From assembly GCA_977020255.1 (NCBI GenBank), contig CDROCS010000410.1, forward strand, positions 310,001 through 374,000: DNA of 64,000 nt, given 5' to 3'. The position numbers and the translations under genes were made by a program. The notes under the pieces are model-generated. The model ran no database searches and was not told where the DNA came from. It saw only the letters and a list, made by a program, of their open reading frames with translations. This DNA comes from Obrimoposthia wandeli. Its lineage: Eukaryota. Below, one piece after another: positions 169-31,476 of this stretch (positions within the stretch are counted from its first letter, which is position 1; every line of letters starts with the position of its first letter).

Positions 169-1269
169 ATGAAATTAACAACACTTGCTCTATTAACAAC
201 CTTAACTACCCCGCTTGCTTTTGCAAACGATGCTGAACAGTTAGATCCACAATCAGATCAAGAATTAGATCAAGAATTAGATCAAAAATCAGCGGTTACT
301 ACATTAACGCCTGAAACATCTGCAGCGATTGATTCAAGTAATAATGCTCCGTCATTCCCTGAATCATTTAAGCCTCAAGGCGAAGCGGTATTAGGGTTAC
401 AATCACTTGAGTCTCAAACTATTGCCATTCAAGAAGAACATTGGAGTGGCTTACCTTTCTTAGGTAAGAAAGCGCGTGAAATGGGTTATCAACTCCCTAT
501 CCCACTGGGTTTTAATGTTTTTTATAACAAGCAAGAAGTAGCTTATGTTGCGCAAGATGATTTCAAATTAGGCTTGAAAGGCGAAAGAGCCGGGCGACCA
601 ACACATCGAGATCCGACCCCTGCACCTAAAGAAATTTCTGGTGATATAGCCATTGCAGCAGACAAGATTTCAATCACAGGCGAAGATGAAAGTGTACAAT
701 TAAAAGTAGATGCTTGGATCTTACCTTTCTGGAATGTTTACGGATTATTGGGTTACACCAAAGGTAATAAAGATATAGCCATGGATTTATCATCAATTGG
801 TATATCCCAACCGCTTGTATTACCAATTGAATACGAAGCTTATAATGTCGGTATTGGCCAAGTACTCGCAGGTCAAGTTGAAGTTATTCCAGGTATGCAT
901 CCATTCGTTTTTACTGCTGTAACAGCATTTACCAATTCATGGACAACAACCACAGATAGCACGATTCAGACGTATATTGGTTCATTCCGCGCTGGTCAAC
1001 GTTACGCAGTACCGGGTGGGCAATTAGCTGTATTACTTGGTTATAACTATCAATTAATAAACCAAAATATCACAGGTTCTTACTCGTTTGACTTACCTGA
1101 TGGTTATCTTGATGTTGACTATGATGTTGCGCTTAAGAGCCAAGAAACCAGTAACATGTCTGTAAGCATGGTTTACGACTTTGGTCCAAAACAAGAATGG
1201 AACATGTTCTTAGAATATGGTTTCTTAAACTGGAACCAAGTGATCTTCTCTGTAGGTCGTCGTTTCTAA
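169..1269 (+). CDS. Secreted hypothetical protein, probable outer-membrane beta-barrel
   Basis: Signal peptide MKLTTLALLTTLTTPLAFA from ATG 169 (track starts at TTG 151); alternating beta-strand pattern and C-terminal Phe (FSVGRRF). Confidence 0.6.
   Translation: MKLTTLALLTTLTTPLAFANDAEQLDPQSDQELDQELDQKSAVTTLTPETSAAIDSSNNAPSFPESFKPQGEAVLGLQSLESQTIAIQEEHWSGLPFLGKKAREMGYQLPIPLGFNVFYNKQEVAYVAQDDFKLGLKGERAGRPTHRDPTPAPKEISGDIAIAADKISITGEDESVQLKVDAWILPFWNVYGLLGYTKGNKDIAMDLSSIGISQPLVLPIEYEAYNVGIGQVLAGQVEVIPGMHPFVFTAVTAFTNSWTTTTDSTIQTYIGSFRAGQRYAVPGGQLAVLLGYNYQLINQNITGSYSFDLPDGYLDVDYDVALKSQETSNMSVSMVYDFGPKQEWNMFLEYGFLNWNQVIFSVGRRF
241..287 (+). repeat. 12-bp in-frame tandem repeat encoding DQEL repeats
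   Basis: gatcaagaatta occurs twice exactly, with degenerate flanking copies; protein reads LDPQSDQELDQELDQK. Confidence 0.8.
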
Positions 1270-9024: not shown

Positions 9025-9070
9025 GTACTGAGTAGTACTGAGTAGTACTGAGTAGTACCGAGTAGTATTG
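9025..9070. repeat. 10-bp intergenic tandem repeat
   Basis: agtagtactg twice, then agtagtaccg and agtagtattg. Confidence 0.9.
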
Positions 9071-22280: not shown

Positions 22281-23210
22281 CTACGCCATTGTTATTGCAA
22301 TTACATCGCGTAACTTACACCGCCAATCCGAAGGTCTAAAGATTGGTGAAATTTTACGGCAGTTTAAAATGCCATTTTTAGGCCTAGTGGCAATAGAAGC
22401 ATACTCTTCACTCGTCACCTCTGTTACATCTCGGCCCTGCTCACCAGGTTGGTATTTATCTAATTCTTCAAAAATAGCGCAAGCAAAATCGAACCAACTT
22501 ACCCCGCTATCACAGTTGTTATTTCCACCAAAACTGTTATTTCCACCACCACTGTTATCACCACAGAAATTATAATCACCAAATTGATAACGGCCAGTTT
22601 TAGCTTGGTGGTCCTTGGCCATATCAACGACTAAATTGGCTAAATCACCCGCATACGTTGGACAGCCAAATTGATCGTTAACGATGCGAATTGGCGCATC
22701 TTTGCGGCTAAGTGATAACATCATAGTGACAAAATTTAGCCCATATTCACTAAATACCCAAGAAGTGCGAATAATGATAAAATGGCTCAGATAAGCCTTT
22801 ATATATTGCTCACCTTGCAATTTAGTGCGGCCGTATACATTCAAAGGGGCTGGTGTATCAGTTTCCAGATAAGCACGATGACCCTGACCACTAAAAATGT
22901 ACTCAGTCGAAAAATGAATGAATAACGCACCTAAGTTATGGCACTGTATTGCTAATAAATAAGGTCCATAAGCATTGAGCGACTCAGCAGCTACCGCATC
23001 ATCTTCCGCCCTATCCACATCGGTATAACCCGCCGCATTAATCACCACATCAGGCCTGAATCTGTTAAACACATTCACAACCTGCTTTGCATTAGTAATA
23101 TCTAATGTGTCGATGTCAGTAAATAGCACATCCCAGCCTTGATCTTGTATACGGTCTTTTATCGCTTGGCCTATCTGCCCTTTCTGTCCAGTGACAAGTA
23201 GTCGATACAT
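22281..23210 (-). CDS. rfbD: dTDP-4-dehydrorhamnose reductase
   Basis: GQKGQIG, INAAGYTDVD, STEYIFSG, YGRTK, IRTSWVF, DQFGCPT. Confidence 0.93.
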   Translation of the reverse strand: MYRLLVTGQKGQIGQAIKDRIQDQGWDVLFTDIDTLDITNAKQVVNVFNRFRPDVVINAAGYTDVDRAEDDAVAAESLNAYGPYLLAIQCHNLGALFIHFSTEYIFSGQGHRAYLETDTPAPLNVYGRTKLQGEQYIKAYLSHFIIIRTSWVFSEYGLNFVTMMLSLSRKDAPIRIVNDQFGCPTYAGDLANLVVDMAKDHQAKTGRYQFGDYNFCGDNSGGGNNSFGGNNNCDSGVSWFDFACAIFEELDKYQPGEQGRDVTEVTSEEYASIATRPKNGILNCRKISPIFRPSDWRCKLRDVIAITMA

Positions 23211-26590: not shown

Positions 26591-27596
26591 ATGAATCTTC
26601 TCTTTGCTCAACGAATAATTTTTTATCGATAACAGCCGCAAAATCATGATTGGTGATATCAATTGTTTGGTCATATCTTGGTATAGCTATTAACTCAGCC
26701 ACTGTATACACAGGCAGTAACTCGTTAGGATAAACAACCGTCATATTAGGATTACTTAACTCTTTGGCAATTTGCAGTTGATGGTCATCAGAGAACTCAC
26801 CAAACTCCTGTAATCTCGGCACAAATATCACTCTCTTCTGATTAATAAGCATATGATTAATACTGCCAACACCACAATGACTAATCACCAAGCTGCTCTC
26901 CTTAACCAAGGCATCCATTTTGTCTTTACCAACCATATCGACTATTTCGCCATTGGCTGGCTTAACATCTACCTCAAAGTCACCCGTTTGGATAAACCAA
27001 CGCACATTTTTGTCGTGATAAATGTCAAGCTTTGCCAGCGCTGCAATCAGCCGTGGAAATGGGTAAGCGTTGGTACCCATAGTGACTAGCACTAATGGAC
27101 TCTCAGGCGGTGATAGCGGCGTCAATGATTTATTAGTTTTCCCTTCTAAATCAAACGTTTTACCCGCATAGTCGACATTATATTCGCGAGCAACAGCTTC
27201 CCATTGCGACATGAATTCATCATATAGTTTATATTTATGGATCAACTTACCGGTATTCGACAGTTCAACAACCCGTGACAAGGTATCCAAATAAACAAAT
27301 CTTAGTGGTAAAAATTTACACACCAAAGCAAAAGGTAAAACGAGTGGTCCACCCGTCGTAAATACAGTATGTGGCCTCTCTTTAGCAAGTACATACAAGG
27401 CATAGAAAATATTAACAAAGTGAATGAAAGCATTTTTTTGCGTCGACCAAATTGTATAAATTTTCTTTATTTTATCCTCATTAACAAGTGCCTTCGTCGT
27501 GACTAATACGATTTCATCTACATGATTACAAGCACATAATGCCTGAGTTAAATGCCCACCAGCAGACGCGATCACAAGCACTTTTTTATTTTGCAT
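26583..27596 (-). CDS. Fused Alg14-like/Alg13-like (PssD-PssE / CpsF-CpsG type) glycosyltransferase
   Basis: N-half ASAGGHL...TTGG..SNTGK..SQW; C-half VTMGT..FPRL..QTG..ISHCGVGSI..DDHQ in one frame; start MQNKK. Confidence 0.8.
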   Translation of the reverse strand: MQNKKVLVIASAGGHLTQALCACNHVDEIVLVTTKALVNEDKIKKIYTIWSTQKNAFIHFVNIFYALYVLAKERPHTVFTTGGPLVLPFALVCKFLPLRFVYLDTLSRVVELSNTGKLIHKYKLYDEFMSQWEAVAREYNVDYAGKTFDLEGKTNKSLTPLSPPESPLVLVTMGTNAYPFPRLIAALAKLDIYHDKNVRWFIQTGDFEVDVKPANGEIVDMVGKDKMDALVKESSLVISHCGVGSINHMLINQKRVIFVPRLQEFGEFSDDHQLQIAKELSNPNMTVVYPNELLPVYTVAELIAIPRYDQTIDITNHDFAAVIDKKLFVEQREDSYG

Positions 27597-28755
27597 TTGA
27601 ATACTCCAGGTTAAGACCATCAACTAAACATTGATAATGGTTAACGACTGTTTTTTTCTCGAAAATATCTAACGCGTGGGTTTCTAATGCGCGGTTGATT
27701 CGAGCGTGAAATAAATCGTGTTGTAAAATCAGCGATTCCACTTTGTTAACTAATTCATCTACATTTTGGTTATAAACTTTAACGCCAGCGTCAACCCCCT
27801 CTAAATAACCATCAATACCGGTATTAGCATGATATAAGATCGGTAGTCCGGAAAATAATGCTTCCACAAATACCATACCGAATGACTCGTTTTGACTCGG
27901 TAATAAAAATGCGGAATATTCGGTTAACTTTTCCTGTAAAACTTTATTATCAATACGTCCTTTGATCGTGACATGCTTATCTAAAGACAATGCTGATATT
28001 TTATCTCGCACTATTTTCATCTTACTTTCAGGTCCAGAACCGTACACATCTAGTTTAATACTCGGGTAATAAGCTATAAGTTTAGCGATAGCTTCTAACA
28101 ATGGCATTATTCCCTTGCGTTCATATTGCTCAAAACGAAAAACGGTAACAAAATTAGCAGCTTTTTTGGGGACATGCAGGTGAGATAATTGTTTCATTTC
28201 ACAGAGATTGGGCAGTAAACTCGATTTATTCGTATCATTGTTGATACTTGCTTTAAGTAATTCGGTTATCGGATCTTGCGCCCAAGCACTCACCCAAAAA
28301 ATATGTTCAGCTTCTTCCAACACTCTTTTCCAGTGTATTCTTAACCCTAATTTATAGCGTAAAATACGTACATCTGTACCACCTCGAATAGAGAGGAAAT
28401 AAGGGACTTGCGCTTGTTTTGCTAATGCCGCACCTAAAGTGCCATCAATGGCGAGCTTATGCCCATGCACGAGTTGATAATCGATGTGCTCATTCTTAAT
28501 GACACTTAATAGTAAATAGCGGGCAAGAAAGAGAGATAGCGTTAACGCAAGACCAAATGGCAATCCCCAATAGTAGATGGAGTAAAGTTGCGAATTATTC
28601 TGAATAACCTTAACTTGCCAAGGCCATGGGGTTCGATGAATAACAAAAATAGTGTGGGTAATACCAGACGTGGCATCGAGGAGTAATTTTACTGCGGGCG
28701 TACTTGAACTATTACGACCATCGGGATAATCTGAGTGTATGTGTAAAACATTCAT
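27586..28755 (-). CDS. Glycosyltransferase family 4
   Basis: EX7E motif ESFGMVFVE, ALFSGLP, DVYGSG; start MNVL. Confidence 0.85.
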   Translation of the reverse strand: MNVLHIHSDYPDGRNSSSTPAVKLLLDATSGITHTIFVIHRTPWPWQVKVIQNNSQLYSIYYWGLPFGLALTLSLFLARYLLLSVIKNEHIDYQLVHGHKLAIDGTLGAALAKQAQVPYFLSIRGGTDVRILRYKLGLRIHWKRVLEEAEHIFWVSAWAQDPITELLKASINNDTNKSSLLPNLCEMKQLSHLHVPKKAANFVTVFRFEQYERKGIMPLLEAIAKLIAYYPSIKLDVYGSGPESKMKIVRDKISALSLDKHVTIKGRIDNKVLQEKLTEYSAFLLPSQNESFGMVFVEALFSGLPILYHANTGIDGYLEGVDAGVKVYNQNVDELVNKVESLILQHDLFHARINRALETHALDIFEKKTVVNHYQCLVDGLNLEYSNAK

Positions 28756-28888
28756 ATCATAACAACCTACCAAAACGGCTTTAAATTAGCAGTTAACCAC
28801 TGTTAAGTAGGAATTATAGGCATTACATTCTGGTATTGGCCACATTAATGGATAAATATGATGAGGTAATTTCTAAGTACATAAAAAT

Positions 28889-28941
28889 AAAGCCAAGTTT
28901 CACATCATGTATTTTAGATACAATCAGCAAAACTTGGCTTT
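28889..28941. terminator. Inverted repeat downstream of the U32 gene
   Basis: aaagccaagttt...aaacttggcttt. Confidence 0.6.
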
Positions 28942-28986
28942 GATCATAGATTAAAGCGCTTGAGCTTCAGTCTATGATGTTAAGGT

Positions 28987-29158
28987 TTATAAACCTTGGT
29001 ACTATTTTTATAAGCCTGACGGCTCTATTTATAAACCTTGAGTGCTTTTTCTTACAAGCCCTGCGTACTCTTTACTATAAACCTTGAGTACTTTTTTTTA
29101 CAAGCCCTGCGTACTCTTTACTATAAACCTTGAGTACTTTTTTTTACAAGCCCTGCGT
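28987..29158 (-). repeat. Tandem array of about 23-bp units (46-bp dimer) copying the U32 gene 3' end
   Basis: Eight units; the 46-bp period is near-exact from 29030 to 29158; the six gene-proximal units read T-Q-G-L-stop on the minus strand. Confidence 0.9.
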
Positions 29159-31387
29159 ATACTGCGCATTAGTCGCTACAGGTACTAATTCAGTTAAAGC
29201 GCCTTTAGCTTCTTCATTGCCTGCAAGTAATGCTTCAAAGTGTTTAATTAGCTCGACTTTGTCTTGTTCTTTTTTAGAACCTGCACCGATGTTAGTTAAA
29301 TCAATGAAGAATTCATCAAACAAATGCGAAAAGTCATTGATTGCATCAAAGTTTAAGAATTGTTCGTCGTTGTAGATGCTTGGGTAGCCACCTTTTTGTT
29401 TATCAACCGCAAACGAAATACCCTTCACATTAGTAATTGTTGTCGCTTTCTCACATTTCAACATGCAACCATCTTCAATCGCAGGTTTCTTACAGCCAAC
29501 TGTTTGTTGGAAGAAACATTGACGACTTGTCATCATCAGAATTGGGTGATAGATGCTGTAGAACATTTTGAAGTTTTTCGGACGACTAATGTTTCTGATT
29601 TGAATACGGTTAATTTCATTAGAAATAAACGCACCTGCACAGTTTAACTCTTCTTGCAGCGTTAATAACGCGTGTGAATTCGTTGTGTTTAAGAACGGAC
29701 CAGCAACCCACTCAATACCCATTTCAAAGGCTTTATACGCGATACCGGTATTATTGGTCACGATACGCTTAGGTTTAACTTCTTCAAGGATCTTCACTGA
29801 CTCTAGGTAATCTTTACCAATCAGTACAGCTGGGAACCAAGGAATTAAGCGTGGGTTTTCTTGCAATAATTTAATGTGTTTAGGACAGTTCTTTTTCAAG
29901 CTTTCAGGGATCTTGAAGTAGATATCTGCATCCGTTACGTCAGCAAGGTGTAGATCTTTCGCATTCGCAATCATCAATGACAATTTAGGCTTGTCTTCTA
30001 CTTTCGGATGCTTAGGTAATGCAGGTACTTCTACATTTTTAACCACATCTCGAGAACCATTTAAAATAAACGCAACTTGATTTTTAAGGTCGCCTAACTC
30101 TTTAAACGGTACCGTTAAGTTAGCATCGAAGTGAGCAAAATCCATTGGCGCTAAATCAAACGTCGCATTGTTGAAACTGCGGAAACGTTTTTCAATAGTT
30201 TCAGGCGTAATTGAAATTTCATCAGCAGCGGCTAAAACAGAACGAGTTTGCACTTCAAATGCAGTATTTCCAGTTGTTACATTAATCGTTAATGGCGCAC
30301 CCAATTTTGCCGAGAATGCTAACGTTAATGCAATTTTATCGATGCTTAAGTCTTTAATCTTATCTGCTAGTTCAGCACCTAATGCATTTTTTTCTGTATA
30401 AAGATCTTGTTTCACATCATGAATTTGTACAACAGAGATAGCATCACTTTTTTCAACAGCATAGTTCACACTGTTGTCACGTGGGTTGTCCGTAAACATT
30501 TTTTTGTTTAGGTCACCCTGCAAGAATGAGTTAGTAAAGCTACGGTTAAATACTTTATGTAAGTTACCGTCGTCTGCTAATAATTTACCTGATTCAACAA
30601 AGTTGTTGATCTGTTTACGCCATGTATCAACAACAGTGTAAACATAGTGAGCGCCTTTAATACGGCCTTCTACTTTTAATGAATCAACACCAGCGTCAAC
30701 CAGTTGCGGTAAGTCAAAGTATGCAGAGTTATCTTTTAAGTTCAATGGGAAGCGATGGCCTTCCGCTGTCACTTCGTATTCGTCACGACATGCTTGGCTG
30801 CAACGACCACGGTTACCTGAATTACCCACACTTACAGAGCTTGAGTAACACTGGCCAGAAAAGGCAATACATAATGCGCCATGCACAAATACTTCTGTTA
30901 ATACGTCATGGTCATGCGCAACAGTCGTTAATTGTTTGATTTCAGTTATGTTTAACTCACGAGATAAGTTGACGCGCGTTGCACCAATTTTTTGTAAGAA
31001 TAACACCTGACCTTCATTGTGGGTTGTCAGCTGAGTAGAGGCATGGATGTGTAGCGATGGGAAATGCTTTTTAACAATATTGAACACACCTAAATCTTGT
31101 ACGATGATGCCATCAATACCACTGTTAACCAGTTTATTAAGCAGGCGCACTAAACTAACAATTTCGTGTTCTAAGATCACAACGTTCAGGGTTAAGAAAA
31201 CTTCGCAGCTGTGTTCATGTGCAAGTCGTAATACACCATTTAGCTCGTCAAACGAAAGATTGGACGCACGGTTACGGGCATTGAACATATCCAAACCACA
31301 GTAAACAGCATTTGCACCAGCAACAATCGCCGCTTTAATTGCTTCTACATCACCACCCGGTGCCAATAATTCTATTTTTCTACTCAT
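29144..31387 (-). CDS. Peptidase U32-family Fe-S protein with long C-terminal extension (RlhA/YdcP-like, probable RNA hydroxylase)
   Basis: ELLAPGG, HASTQ, EVFVHGALCIAFSGQC, NRGRCSQACR, SLKVEGR; probable start MSRK at 31387. Confidence 0.85.
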   Translation of the reverse strand: MSRKIELLAPGGDVEAIKAAIVAGANAVYCGLDMFNARNRASNLSFDELNGVLRLAHEHSCEVFLTLNVVILEHEIVSLVRLLNKLVNSGIDGIIVQDLGVFNIVKKHFPSLHIHASTQLTTHNEGQVLFLQKIGATRVNLSRELNITEIKQLTTVAHDHDVLTEVFVHGALCIAFSGQCYSSSVSVGNSGNRGRCSQACRDEYEVTAEGHRFPLNLKDNSAYFDLPQLVDAGVDSLKVEGRIKGAHYVYTVVDTWRKQINNFVESGKLLADDGNLHKVFNRSFTNSFLQGDLNKKMFTDNPRDNSVNYAVEKSDAISVVQIHDVKQDLYTEKNALGAELADKIKDLSIDKIALTLAFSAKLGAPLTINVTTGNTAFEVQTRSVLAAADEISITPETIEKRFRSFNNATFDLAPMDFAHFDANLTVPFKELGDLKNQVAFILNGSRDVVKNVEVPALPKHPKVEDKPKLSLMIANAKDLHLADVTDADIYFKIPESLKKNCPKHIKLLQENPRLIPWFPAVLIGKDYLESVKILEEVKPKRIVTNNTGIAYKAFEMGIEWVAGPFLNTTNSHALLTLQEELNCAGAFISNEINRIQIRNISRPKNFKMFYSIYHPILMMTSRQCFFQQTVGCKKPAIEDGCMLKCEKATTITNVKGISFAVDKQKGGYPSIYNDEQFLNFDAINDFSHLFDEFFIDLTNIGAGSKKEQDKVELIKHFEALLAGNEEAKGALTELVPVATNAQYTQGL

Positions 31388-31476
31388 GCGAAATAACCCA
31401 CTTAATGCTTTTATTGTAATTTTTTGAGGGGGCATTCTACCTGTATATGCAATTCAATGCTATGCATTAGAAATTA

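What the first reader, a model, noticed from the sequence alone, without database searches (positions are those of the whole stretch)
28987..29158. Array of eight units repeating the U32 gene's last codons in synonymous variants
On the minus strand the gene ends ACG CAG GGC TTG TAA (T-Q-G-L-stop). Following units, at about 23-bp spacing, alternate between that version (29098, 29052) and ACT CAA GGT TTA TAG/TAA (29121, 29075, 29029). The second version differs only at third codon positions and still reads T-Q-G-L-stop. Two decayed units follow (CCG TCA GGC TTA TAA; TAC CAA GGT TTA TAA), and the last sits in a 16-bp palindrome AAGGTTTATAAACCTT. Purely synonymous divergence is hard to explain by slippage alone. 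It suggests the 3' ends of two different alleles were captured and then amplified. The array lies at the border with the glycan cluster, so it may be a scar of repeated integration or allele exchange at a hotspot, or a reservoir of swappable gene ends. No integrase is visible in the window.
Basis: partly seen in the sequence, partly recalled or inferred. Interest (0 to 1): 0.7.

Follow-up and report, generated by a model that had tools for sequence, protein, structure and literature searches.

The report
Stacked spare copies of a gene's end
Just after a conserved Moritella housekeeping gene lies a short tandem array made of copies of the gene's own last five codons, and the copies differ only in ways that would not change the protein, which most likely records slippage plus recombination between diverged strains rather than a new genetic system.

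Summary
Window 28987-29158 (minus strand) holds eight 23-base units: six intact, alternating between two versions, and two decayed. They form a 46-base doublet repeated 3.8 times. Unit 1 is the real end of a 763-aa U32 peptidase gene. The array lies in that gene's 3' untranslated region, before a conserved terminator hairpin.

At the same site, twelve Moritella species and three metagenome contigs carry 1 to 9 units. Across all of them the non-coding units vary almost only at synonymous positions (8 of 16 distinct pairs fully synonymous, about 1 expected). Vibrio genomes show the same pattern after the orthologous gene, with a 16-base period and no glycan genes downstream.

The window's gene is a mosaic. 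Its closest relative changes about 250 bases before the stop and again inside the array.

Best reading: palindrome-rich gene ends duplicate by slippage. Ordinary homologous recombination between diverged lineages, crossing over inside the array, then places side by side ends that diverged while coding. The doublet was then amplified.

The integration-scar, hotspot and swappable-reservoir ideas are not. Read-level checks could not be run.

The parts
29144..31435 (-). U32 family peptidase gene (763 aa); its last five codons plus stop are unit 1 of the array
   Evidence: Pfam PF01136 at 3e-73 plus PF12392. The C-terminal Q-G-L-stop is kept in nearly all of 80 orthologues. The gene is a mosaic, with a breakpoint about 250 nt before the stop.
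29144..29158 (-). Unit 1, version A, the coding end
29029..29143 (-). Units 2-6 with their 8-base spacers: B, A, B, A, B, all non-coding and all still reading T-Q-G-L-stop
   Evidence: The 46-base doublets are 96% alike.
28987..29028 (-). Units 7 and 8, decayed by small indels. They are homologous to units 2-3 of species G005, and the last one sits next to the ancestral downstream flank.
28982..28997 (-). 16-bp palindrome spanning the last unit's stop region
28943..28978 (-). Small hairpin between the array and the terminator
   Evidence: inverted repeat I3 and the RNA fold
28889..28941 (-). Long conserved hairpin followed by a T-run, the likely terminator of the U32 transcript. It marks the 3' limit of the untranslated region that holds the array.
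   Evidence: 12-bp perfect arms, fold, present in all 12 Moritella species
28813..28842 (-). Promoter-like site (10 of 12 matches) ahead of the first glycosyltransferase gene. It lies outside the array and is conserved in relatives.
27586..28773 (-). GT4 glycosyltransferase, first gene of the glycan cluster (probable ATG at 28755). Two deep allele classes exist among Moritella species.

Best explanation
The array is a minisatellite in the 3' untranslated region of the U32 gene. It is built from copies of the gene's last five codons, its stop codon and eight following bases. Each unit carries two 8-bp palindromes, one at the spacer/unit junction and one over the stop region. Single strands of the array therefore fold on themselves, and replication slippage readily adds or removes units (inferred). 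Within a lineage, new units are fresh copies of the current coding end. The coding end itself can change only synonymously. When diverged Moritella lineages recombine by ordinary homologous recombination and one crossover falls inside the array, units from two lineages end up side by side, differing only at synonymous sites. In the window, a tract of about 250 bases of gene end plus units 1-5/6 from a T-Q-G-L-type lineage was joined to a resident K-Q-G-L-type array. The resident's former coding end and its two old units survive as units 6-8. The A+B doublet was then amplified to three copies. The mosaic, the copy-number variation and the synonymous pattern are shown. The order of events and the slippage mechanism are inferred. 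No function is required.
For: Copy number at the orthologous site is 1, about 1.5, 2, 3, 3, 5, 8 and 9 across Moritella genomes and metagenome contigs. One array consists of nine identical copies of its own coding end (L117). The last unit always abuts the flank that follows the single gene end in array-free relatives. In 10 distinct 23-mers, every first and second codon position is invariant and every synonymous position varies. Fully synonymous pairs number 8 of 16 against 0.7-1.3 expected (P <= 2e-7), with 0-1 in the off-frame controls. Five non-coding units equal the coding end of another sampled genome. The window's nearest relative switches from G008 (94%) to the G010/G002 clade in the last 250 nt (G008 falls to 75%; Fisher 8e-8), then to G007/G005 (90/89%) downstream of the array. 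Units 7-8 plus flank match G005 units 2-3. A homogeneous array folds as single-stranded DNA at -33 kcal/mol, z = -9.1.
Against: Most synonymous non-coding variants were not seen as coding ends in this sample of one genome per species. Version A occurs nowhere else. Five of the eight spacer positions are invariant although the synonymous sites look saturated. Plain neutral import from diverged lineages does not predict that, and it hints at constraint or at young spacers. The donor lineage was not identified (best identity 88%). No reads, within-species series or slippage rates could be examined.
Confidence: 0.58

Rival explanations
1. Selection in place through concerted evolution. Slippage often deletes leading units, so any downstream unit can become the coding end. 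Units with a changed residue or a lost stop are then purged, which keeps all units translatable while synonymous sites drift.
For: The synonymous-only pattern holds in orthologous non-coding units of different lineages: the second-position unit differs between the window and L118/L119 at three positions, all synonymous. Q-G-L-stop is strongly conserved in the protein family. Decay grows with distance from the gene in the window and in several Vibrio arrays.
Against: Two units in one genome cannot both be coding at the same time. Yet A and B differ at 5 of 5 synonymous sites while the adjacent spacers differ at only 2 of 8. Identical doublet copies show recent turnover, which should homogenise units rather than preserve deep divergence.
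Confidence: 0.2
2. A functional cis-element. Candidates are tandem promoters (a -35-like hexamer in A and a -10-like hexamer in B, 18 bases apart) making a short RNA or feeding the glycan operon, or repeated protein- or RNA-binding sites in the 3' untranslated region.
For: Two promoter-like matches of 9 of 12 fall on the doublets. Spacer positions 2-4 and 6-7 are invariant. Each B unit lies in a 6-bp-stem hairpin. Arrays recur after the same gene in two families.
Against: Promoter-like matches are barely above the shuffled background (6 found against 2.9 expected). A strong hairpin with a T-run lies between the array and the glycan genes, which have their own conserved promoter-like site. Period and copy number vary freely (16, 23 and 32 bases; 1-9 copies), and half of the Moritella species have no array. 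A binding site would not vary with a period of three. Rfam gives no hit.
Confidence: 0.1
3. A scar of repeated site-specific integration, in which each visit of a mobile element that carries a substitute gene end left one copy behind.
For: Spare gene ends with mostly synonymous differences are known at prophage attachment sites inside genes, for example icd/icdC with e14 (PMC13626634). One species (G009) has a 9.4-kb RTX/type I secretion insertion in this intergenic region.
Against: No integrase or transposase lies within about 9 kb. No DNA lies between units, and the spacing is a strict 23 bases. The G009 insertion lies beyond the terminator hairpin, not in the array. Site-specific excision restores one site rather than stacking them.
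Confidence: 0.04
4. An assembly artefact in unit number or order.
For: No reads could be laid on the region. The contig is a bacterial passenger in a eukaryote assembly.
Against: Arrays with the same unit phase and spacer occur in independent assemblies, including two single-contig chromosomes and three metagenome contigs. The array is only 172 bases long.
Confidence: 0.04

Closest known systems
Bacterial intergenic minisatellites (VNTR loci) formed by slipped-strand mispairing
   Same: Head-to-tail units, copy number that differs between related genomes, and higher-order doublet periodicity.
   Different: The unit is a copy of the adjacent gene's last codons with its stop. Unit variants differ almost only at synonymous positions. 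The same kind of array recurs after the orthologous gene in another family.
Spare 3' gene fragments at attachment sites inside genes (icd / icdC flanking prophage e14 in E. coli; PMC13626634)
   Same: A second, non-expressed copy of a gene's C-terminal coding end lies downstream. It differs mostly synonymously because it evolved as a coding end elsewhere, and it can replace the resident end by recombination.
   Different: Here there is no mobile element or integrase between the copies. Units are 15 bases, not about 160. There are up to nine copies in strict tandem, and swapping would not alter the protein.
Concerted evolution between a gene and silent partial copies by gene conversion (my own knowledge: pilE/pilS, tuf duplicates)
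   Same: Non-expressed copies that keep a coding-like substitution pattern through exchange with the expressed copy.
   Different: There is no diversity at the protein level, the copies are tiny and directly tandem, and exchange is by slippage rather than long-tract conversion.

Membership tests
Minisatellite / VNTR | Head-to-tail tandem units of 10-100 bases | tested here: met
   Period 23 and 46, 7.1 and 3.8 copies
Minisatellite / VNTR | Copy number differs at the orthologous site among related genomes | tested here: met
   1 to 9 units in 12 species and 3 metagenome contigs
Minisatellite / VNTR | Length variation within a population or strain series | not testable with these tools
Site-specific integration scar (duplicated attachment site) | Integrase or recombinase gene next to the repeats | tested here: not met
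   ORFs within about 9 kb on both sides are glycan enzymes, peptidases, a LysR regulator and oxidoreductases
Site-specific integration scar (duplicated attachment site) | Foreign DNA bracketed by the repeat copies in at least some genomes | tested here: not met
   Units are contiguous in every genome. The only insertion (G009) lies beyond the terminator hairpin
Dispersed repeat family (REP-like) | Many copies at unrelated loci | tested here: not met
   The motif occurs only at this locus in five Moritella genomes. In the host assembly there are only scattered singletons, at or below the control count
Known structured RNA | Match to an Rfam model | tested here: not met
   Only sub-threshold eukaryotic snoRNA/miRNA noise
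Sigma-70 promoter array | Transcription starts inside the array | not testable with these tools
   Only consensus matches of 9 of 12; no RNA data could be reached

The most novel reading that the evidence does not exclude
The non-coding copies are not passive. Because slippage keeps rotating units into and out of the coding position, selection on an essential C-terminus reaches every unit. The array is then a self-renewing stack of translatable gene ends that also records successive allele replacements. This process would recur at the same gene in Moritella and Vibrio because its stop region is palindromic.
Probability: 0.2. Interest if true: 0.65.

Novelty: new variant of a known kind. Interest (0 to 1): 0.48.

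Why it matters
The array shows that short non-coding DNA can carry a clean signature of purifying selection without being translated. That is a trap for gene finders and for dN/dS-style inference. It also gives a compact natural marker of recombination between marine bacterial lineages at a gene that borders a surface-glycan cluster. If the rotating-end model holds, it would be an unusual case of selection reaching non-coding repeats through their mutational dynamics. As it stands, it is an evolutionary footprint, not a new molecular machine.

Tried and rejected
- **Rfam scan of 28600-29300:** nothing relevant.
- **Further copies in the window or beyond the glycan genes:** none. The one 3-mismatch hit, inside rmlA, is at chance level.
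- **Dispersed-repeat idea:** rejected.
- **CsrA-type binding sites:** considered because the loops carry AAGG, but rejected. The GG-following base varies freely, which is the opposite of the GGA requirement (my own knowledge of the motif; for the variation).
- **DGR-type mutagenesis:** rejected. Differences are not at adenines, the unit is too short, and there is no reverse transcriptase nearby.
- **Read-through or frameshift extension:** every third unit is in frame, so a read-through product would again end in the same peptide. I found no evidence that this is used.
- **Spacer periodicity:** the spacer variation also looked three-periodic (Lys-Ser codons before each unit), but with three variable sites this is not significant (about 0.29 by counting).
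- **Literature:** a full-text search for this kind of array found nothing relevant.
- Cluster look-up gave only singletons.

Full report
**What the window is.** The window is G000:C410:310001-374000 of a 1.35-Gb assembly with 6912 contigs. Its genes are bacterial. The U32 protein at 29144-31435 (minus strand) is 93-94% identical to Moritella proteins, and at most 97% identical to any protein in the wider search. The contig is therefore a Moritella passenger in a eukaryote assembly.

**The observation.**
- Tandem Repeats Finder gives period 46 x 3.8 copies and period 23 x 7.1 copies at 28986-29159. This is the strongest tandem repeat in the window.
- On the minus strand there are eight units.
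- Version A lies at 29144-29158 (the true gene end), 29098-29112 and 29052-29066.
- Version B lies at 29121-29135, 29075-29089 and 29029-29043.
- Two units broken by small indels lie at 29008-29022 and 28987-29000.
- Intact units are separated by 8-base spacers, and each version has its own spacer type.
- A and B differ at all five third codon positions and nowhere else. Both read T-Q-G-L-stop.

**Where it sits.**
- The array fills the first 172 bases after the U32 stop.
- Next come a small hairpin (28943-28978) and a long hairpin with 12-bp perfect arms and a T-run (28889-28941). The long hairpin is present in all twelve Moritella species examined. The array is thus inside the U32 3' untranslated region.
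- Further on are a promoter-like site (28813-28842, 10 of 12 matches) and the first glycosyltransferase gene.
- The downstream genes are GT4, a GT28/Alg14-like enzyme, GT2, the four dTDP-rhamnose enzymes and more.
- No integrase or transposase lies within about 9 kb on either side.

**Relatives.**
- A family-wide genome search found the orthologous site in twelve Moritella species.
- Unit counts are one in six species and about one and a half in two. G012 has two units, G010 and G005 have three, and G002 has five.
- A pattern scan of metagenome contigs added three Moritella arrays.
- L117 has nine units identical to its own coding end.
- L118 has two alternating versions plus a fifth variant.
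- L119 has three different versions.
- The arrays share unit phase and spacer consensus, so they are homologous.
- In every array the last unit abuts the flank that directly follows the single gene end in array-free Moritella and Photobacterium. This is what tandem duplication predicts.

**The synonymous pattern is general.**
- Among ten distinct 23-mers from Moritella arrays, all first and second codon positions are invariant. The variable positions are 3, 6, 9, 10, 12 and 15, each synonymous for T-Q-G-L-stop, plus three spacer positions.
- One leucine codon changes at two positions at once and still encodes leucine.
- In a randomisation that keeps each pair's number of differences, 8 of 16 distinct (coding end, unit) pairs are fully synonymous. 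The expectation is 0.7-1.3, giving P between 1.5e-10 and 1.8e-7 depending on transition bias. Reading the same units in the two other frames gives 0 and 1.
- The pairs share ancestry, so these probabilities are indicative rather than exact.

**The same thing in Vibrio.**
- Scanning all 80 orthologous loci showed near-copies of the last 15 bases after the U32 stop in many Vibrio genomes (mostly relatives of V. splendidus). They have a 16-base period, and some have 8-base sub-repeats. One Neptunomonas has such a copy too.
- There, 6 of 26 pairs are fully synonymous against about 1 expected (P <= 4e-4).
- Downstream genes in Vibrio are a thioesterase and an ABC transporter, with an IS4 element in one strain. 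They are not glycan genes.
- Only 2 of 399 other long ORFs in the same loci have a near-copy of their end, against 8 of 75 U32 genes.

- The TAA form of version B is the exact native coding end in G012 and in Photobacterium L005.
- In Vibrio, four non-coding units equal the coding end of another sampled genome.
- Version A, and most other variants, were not seen as coding ends elsewhere in this sample of one genome per species.

**Mosaic structure.**
- Along the U32 gene the window is closest to G008 over nt 750-1950 (92-96%).
- In the last 250 nt, identity to G008 falls to 75-84%, while G010 and G002 stay at 84-91% (Fisher 8e-8).
- Downstream of the array, and in GT4, the closest relatives are G007 and G005 (90/89% and 87/85%), with G008 at only 73%.
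- Units 7-8 and their flank align with units 2-3 and the flank of G005. Unit 6 stands where G005 has its coding end.
- The array therefore spans a junction between DNA of different ancestry.
- GT4 has two deep allele classes (72-75% against 84-87%). Homology between lineages thus drops sharply right after the U32 gene, which would concentrate crossovers there (inference).

**Why it expands.** Each unit holds two 8-bp palindromes: GAGTACTC at the spacer/unit junction and TTTATAAA over the stop. The homogeneous array of L117 folds as single-stranded DNA at -33 kcal/mol, against -10 for shuffles (z = -9.1). In the window each B unit lies in a 6-bp-stem hairpin. Hairpin-assisted slippage between direct repeats is an established mechanism (my own knowledge). 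Its action here is inferred.

**Explanation.**
- Slippage copies the current coding end, and the coding end can drift only synonymously.
- Homologous recombination between diverged lineages, crossing over inside the array, juxtaposes ends that diverged while coding. Doublets are then amplified.
- This needs no integrase and explains five things: the polarity (oldest, decayed units at the far end), the mosaic, the homogeneous arrays, the alternating arrays and the Vibrio cases.
- Its weak point is the spacer. Five of eight spacer positions are invariant although synonymous sites look saturated.
- That suggests the array backbone is young and only coding-end variants are old, or that the spacer (part of the palindrome) is constrained.
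- The main rival is selection in place, because units rotate into the coding position. It fits the orthologous second-position units, which differ only synonymously between the window and L118/L119.
- That rival cannot easily explain deep A/B divergence next to nearly identical spacers.
- A cis-regulatory role cannot be excluded, but it has only consensus-level support.

**Comparison with known things.**
- The array is a minisatellite by structure and by variation between species.
- The nearest precedent for a spare, synonymously different gene end is icd/icdC around prophage e14 (PMC13626634). There an integrase-bearing element sits between the copies, and here nothing does.
- My searches turned up no description of tandem stacks of a gene's terminal codons with synonymous-only variation. 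That is weak evidence of absence.

**Limits.**
- Reads could not be examined, so the exact unit number in this assembly is unverified.
- Extra strains could not be fetched.
- All mechanistic steps are inferred from comparative sequence.

Noticed in passing
whole window; G000:C410: The contig is Moritella DNA (U32 protein 93-94% identical to Moritella species) inside a 1.35-Gb, 6912-contig eukaryote assembly. It is a symbiont, gut or contaminant genome carried along.
   Followed up: partly
window 29144-31435: The U32 gene is a patchwork. Identity to G008 runs at 92-96% over nt 750-1950 but 75-84% in the last 250 nt. A block at nt 900-1350 is only 74-83% identical to every species other than G008 and G006.
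   Followed up: partly
window 28889-28941: The long hairpin has a 29-base loop whose sequence, not only the stem, is conserved across all Moritella species. That is more conservation than a plain terminator needs.
   Followed up: no
window 28760-28842: A conserved promoter-like site is followed by a GGTAG-containing stretch just before the GT4 start. In G003 it reads as 7 of 8 bases of the ops/JUMPstart core, suggesting RfaH-type antitermination of the glycan operon.
   Followed up: no
L111:4483-13948 (species G009): A 9.4-kb insertion lies between the U32 terminator and GT4. It encodes a 1886-aa RTX repeat protein with its ABC exporter and HlyD-type fusion protein.
   Followed up: partly
window 27586-28773 and orthologues: The first glycosyltransferase gene has two deep allele classes among Moritella species (72-75% against 84-87% nucleotide identity to the window), while the flanking genes are far more uniform.
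   Followed up: partly
L005-L012 (Photobacterium): Photobacterium U32 proteins are 88-90% identical to the Moritella protein, while Vibrio and Aliivibrio proteins are only 70-79% identical. This suggests transfer of the gene between the two families.
   Followed up: no
L027, L034, L029 just after the U32 stop: There are other short tandem repeats in the same 3' region: three 8-base copies of the stop region in L027, a run of 7-8-base repeats in L034, and four 8-base repeats near the terminator in L029.
   Followed up: no
L003 near 9546 (+) and L034 near 3801 (-): Two unrelated genes also have one near-copy of their last 15 bases six bases after the stop. One of these copies is fully synonymous.
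   Followed up: no
window 241-289, 9025-9067, 22517-22558: Three other small tandem repeats (periods 12, 10 and 18) were not examined.
   Followed up: no
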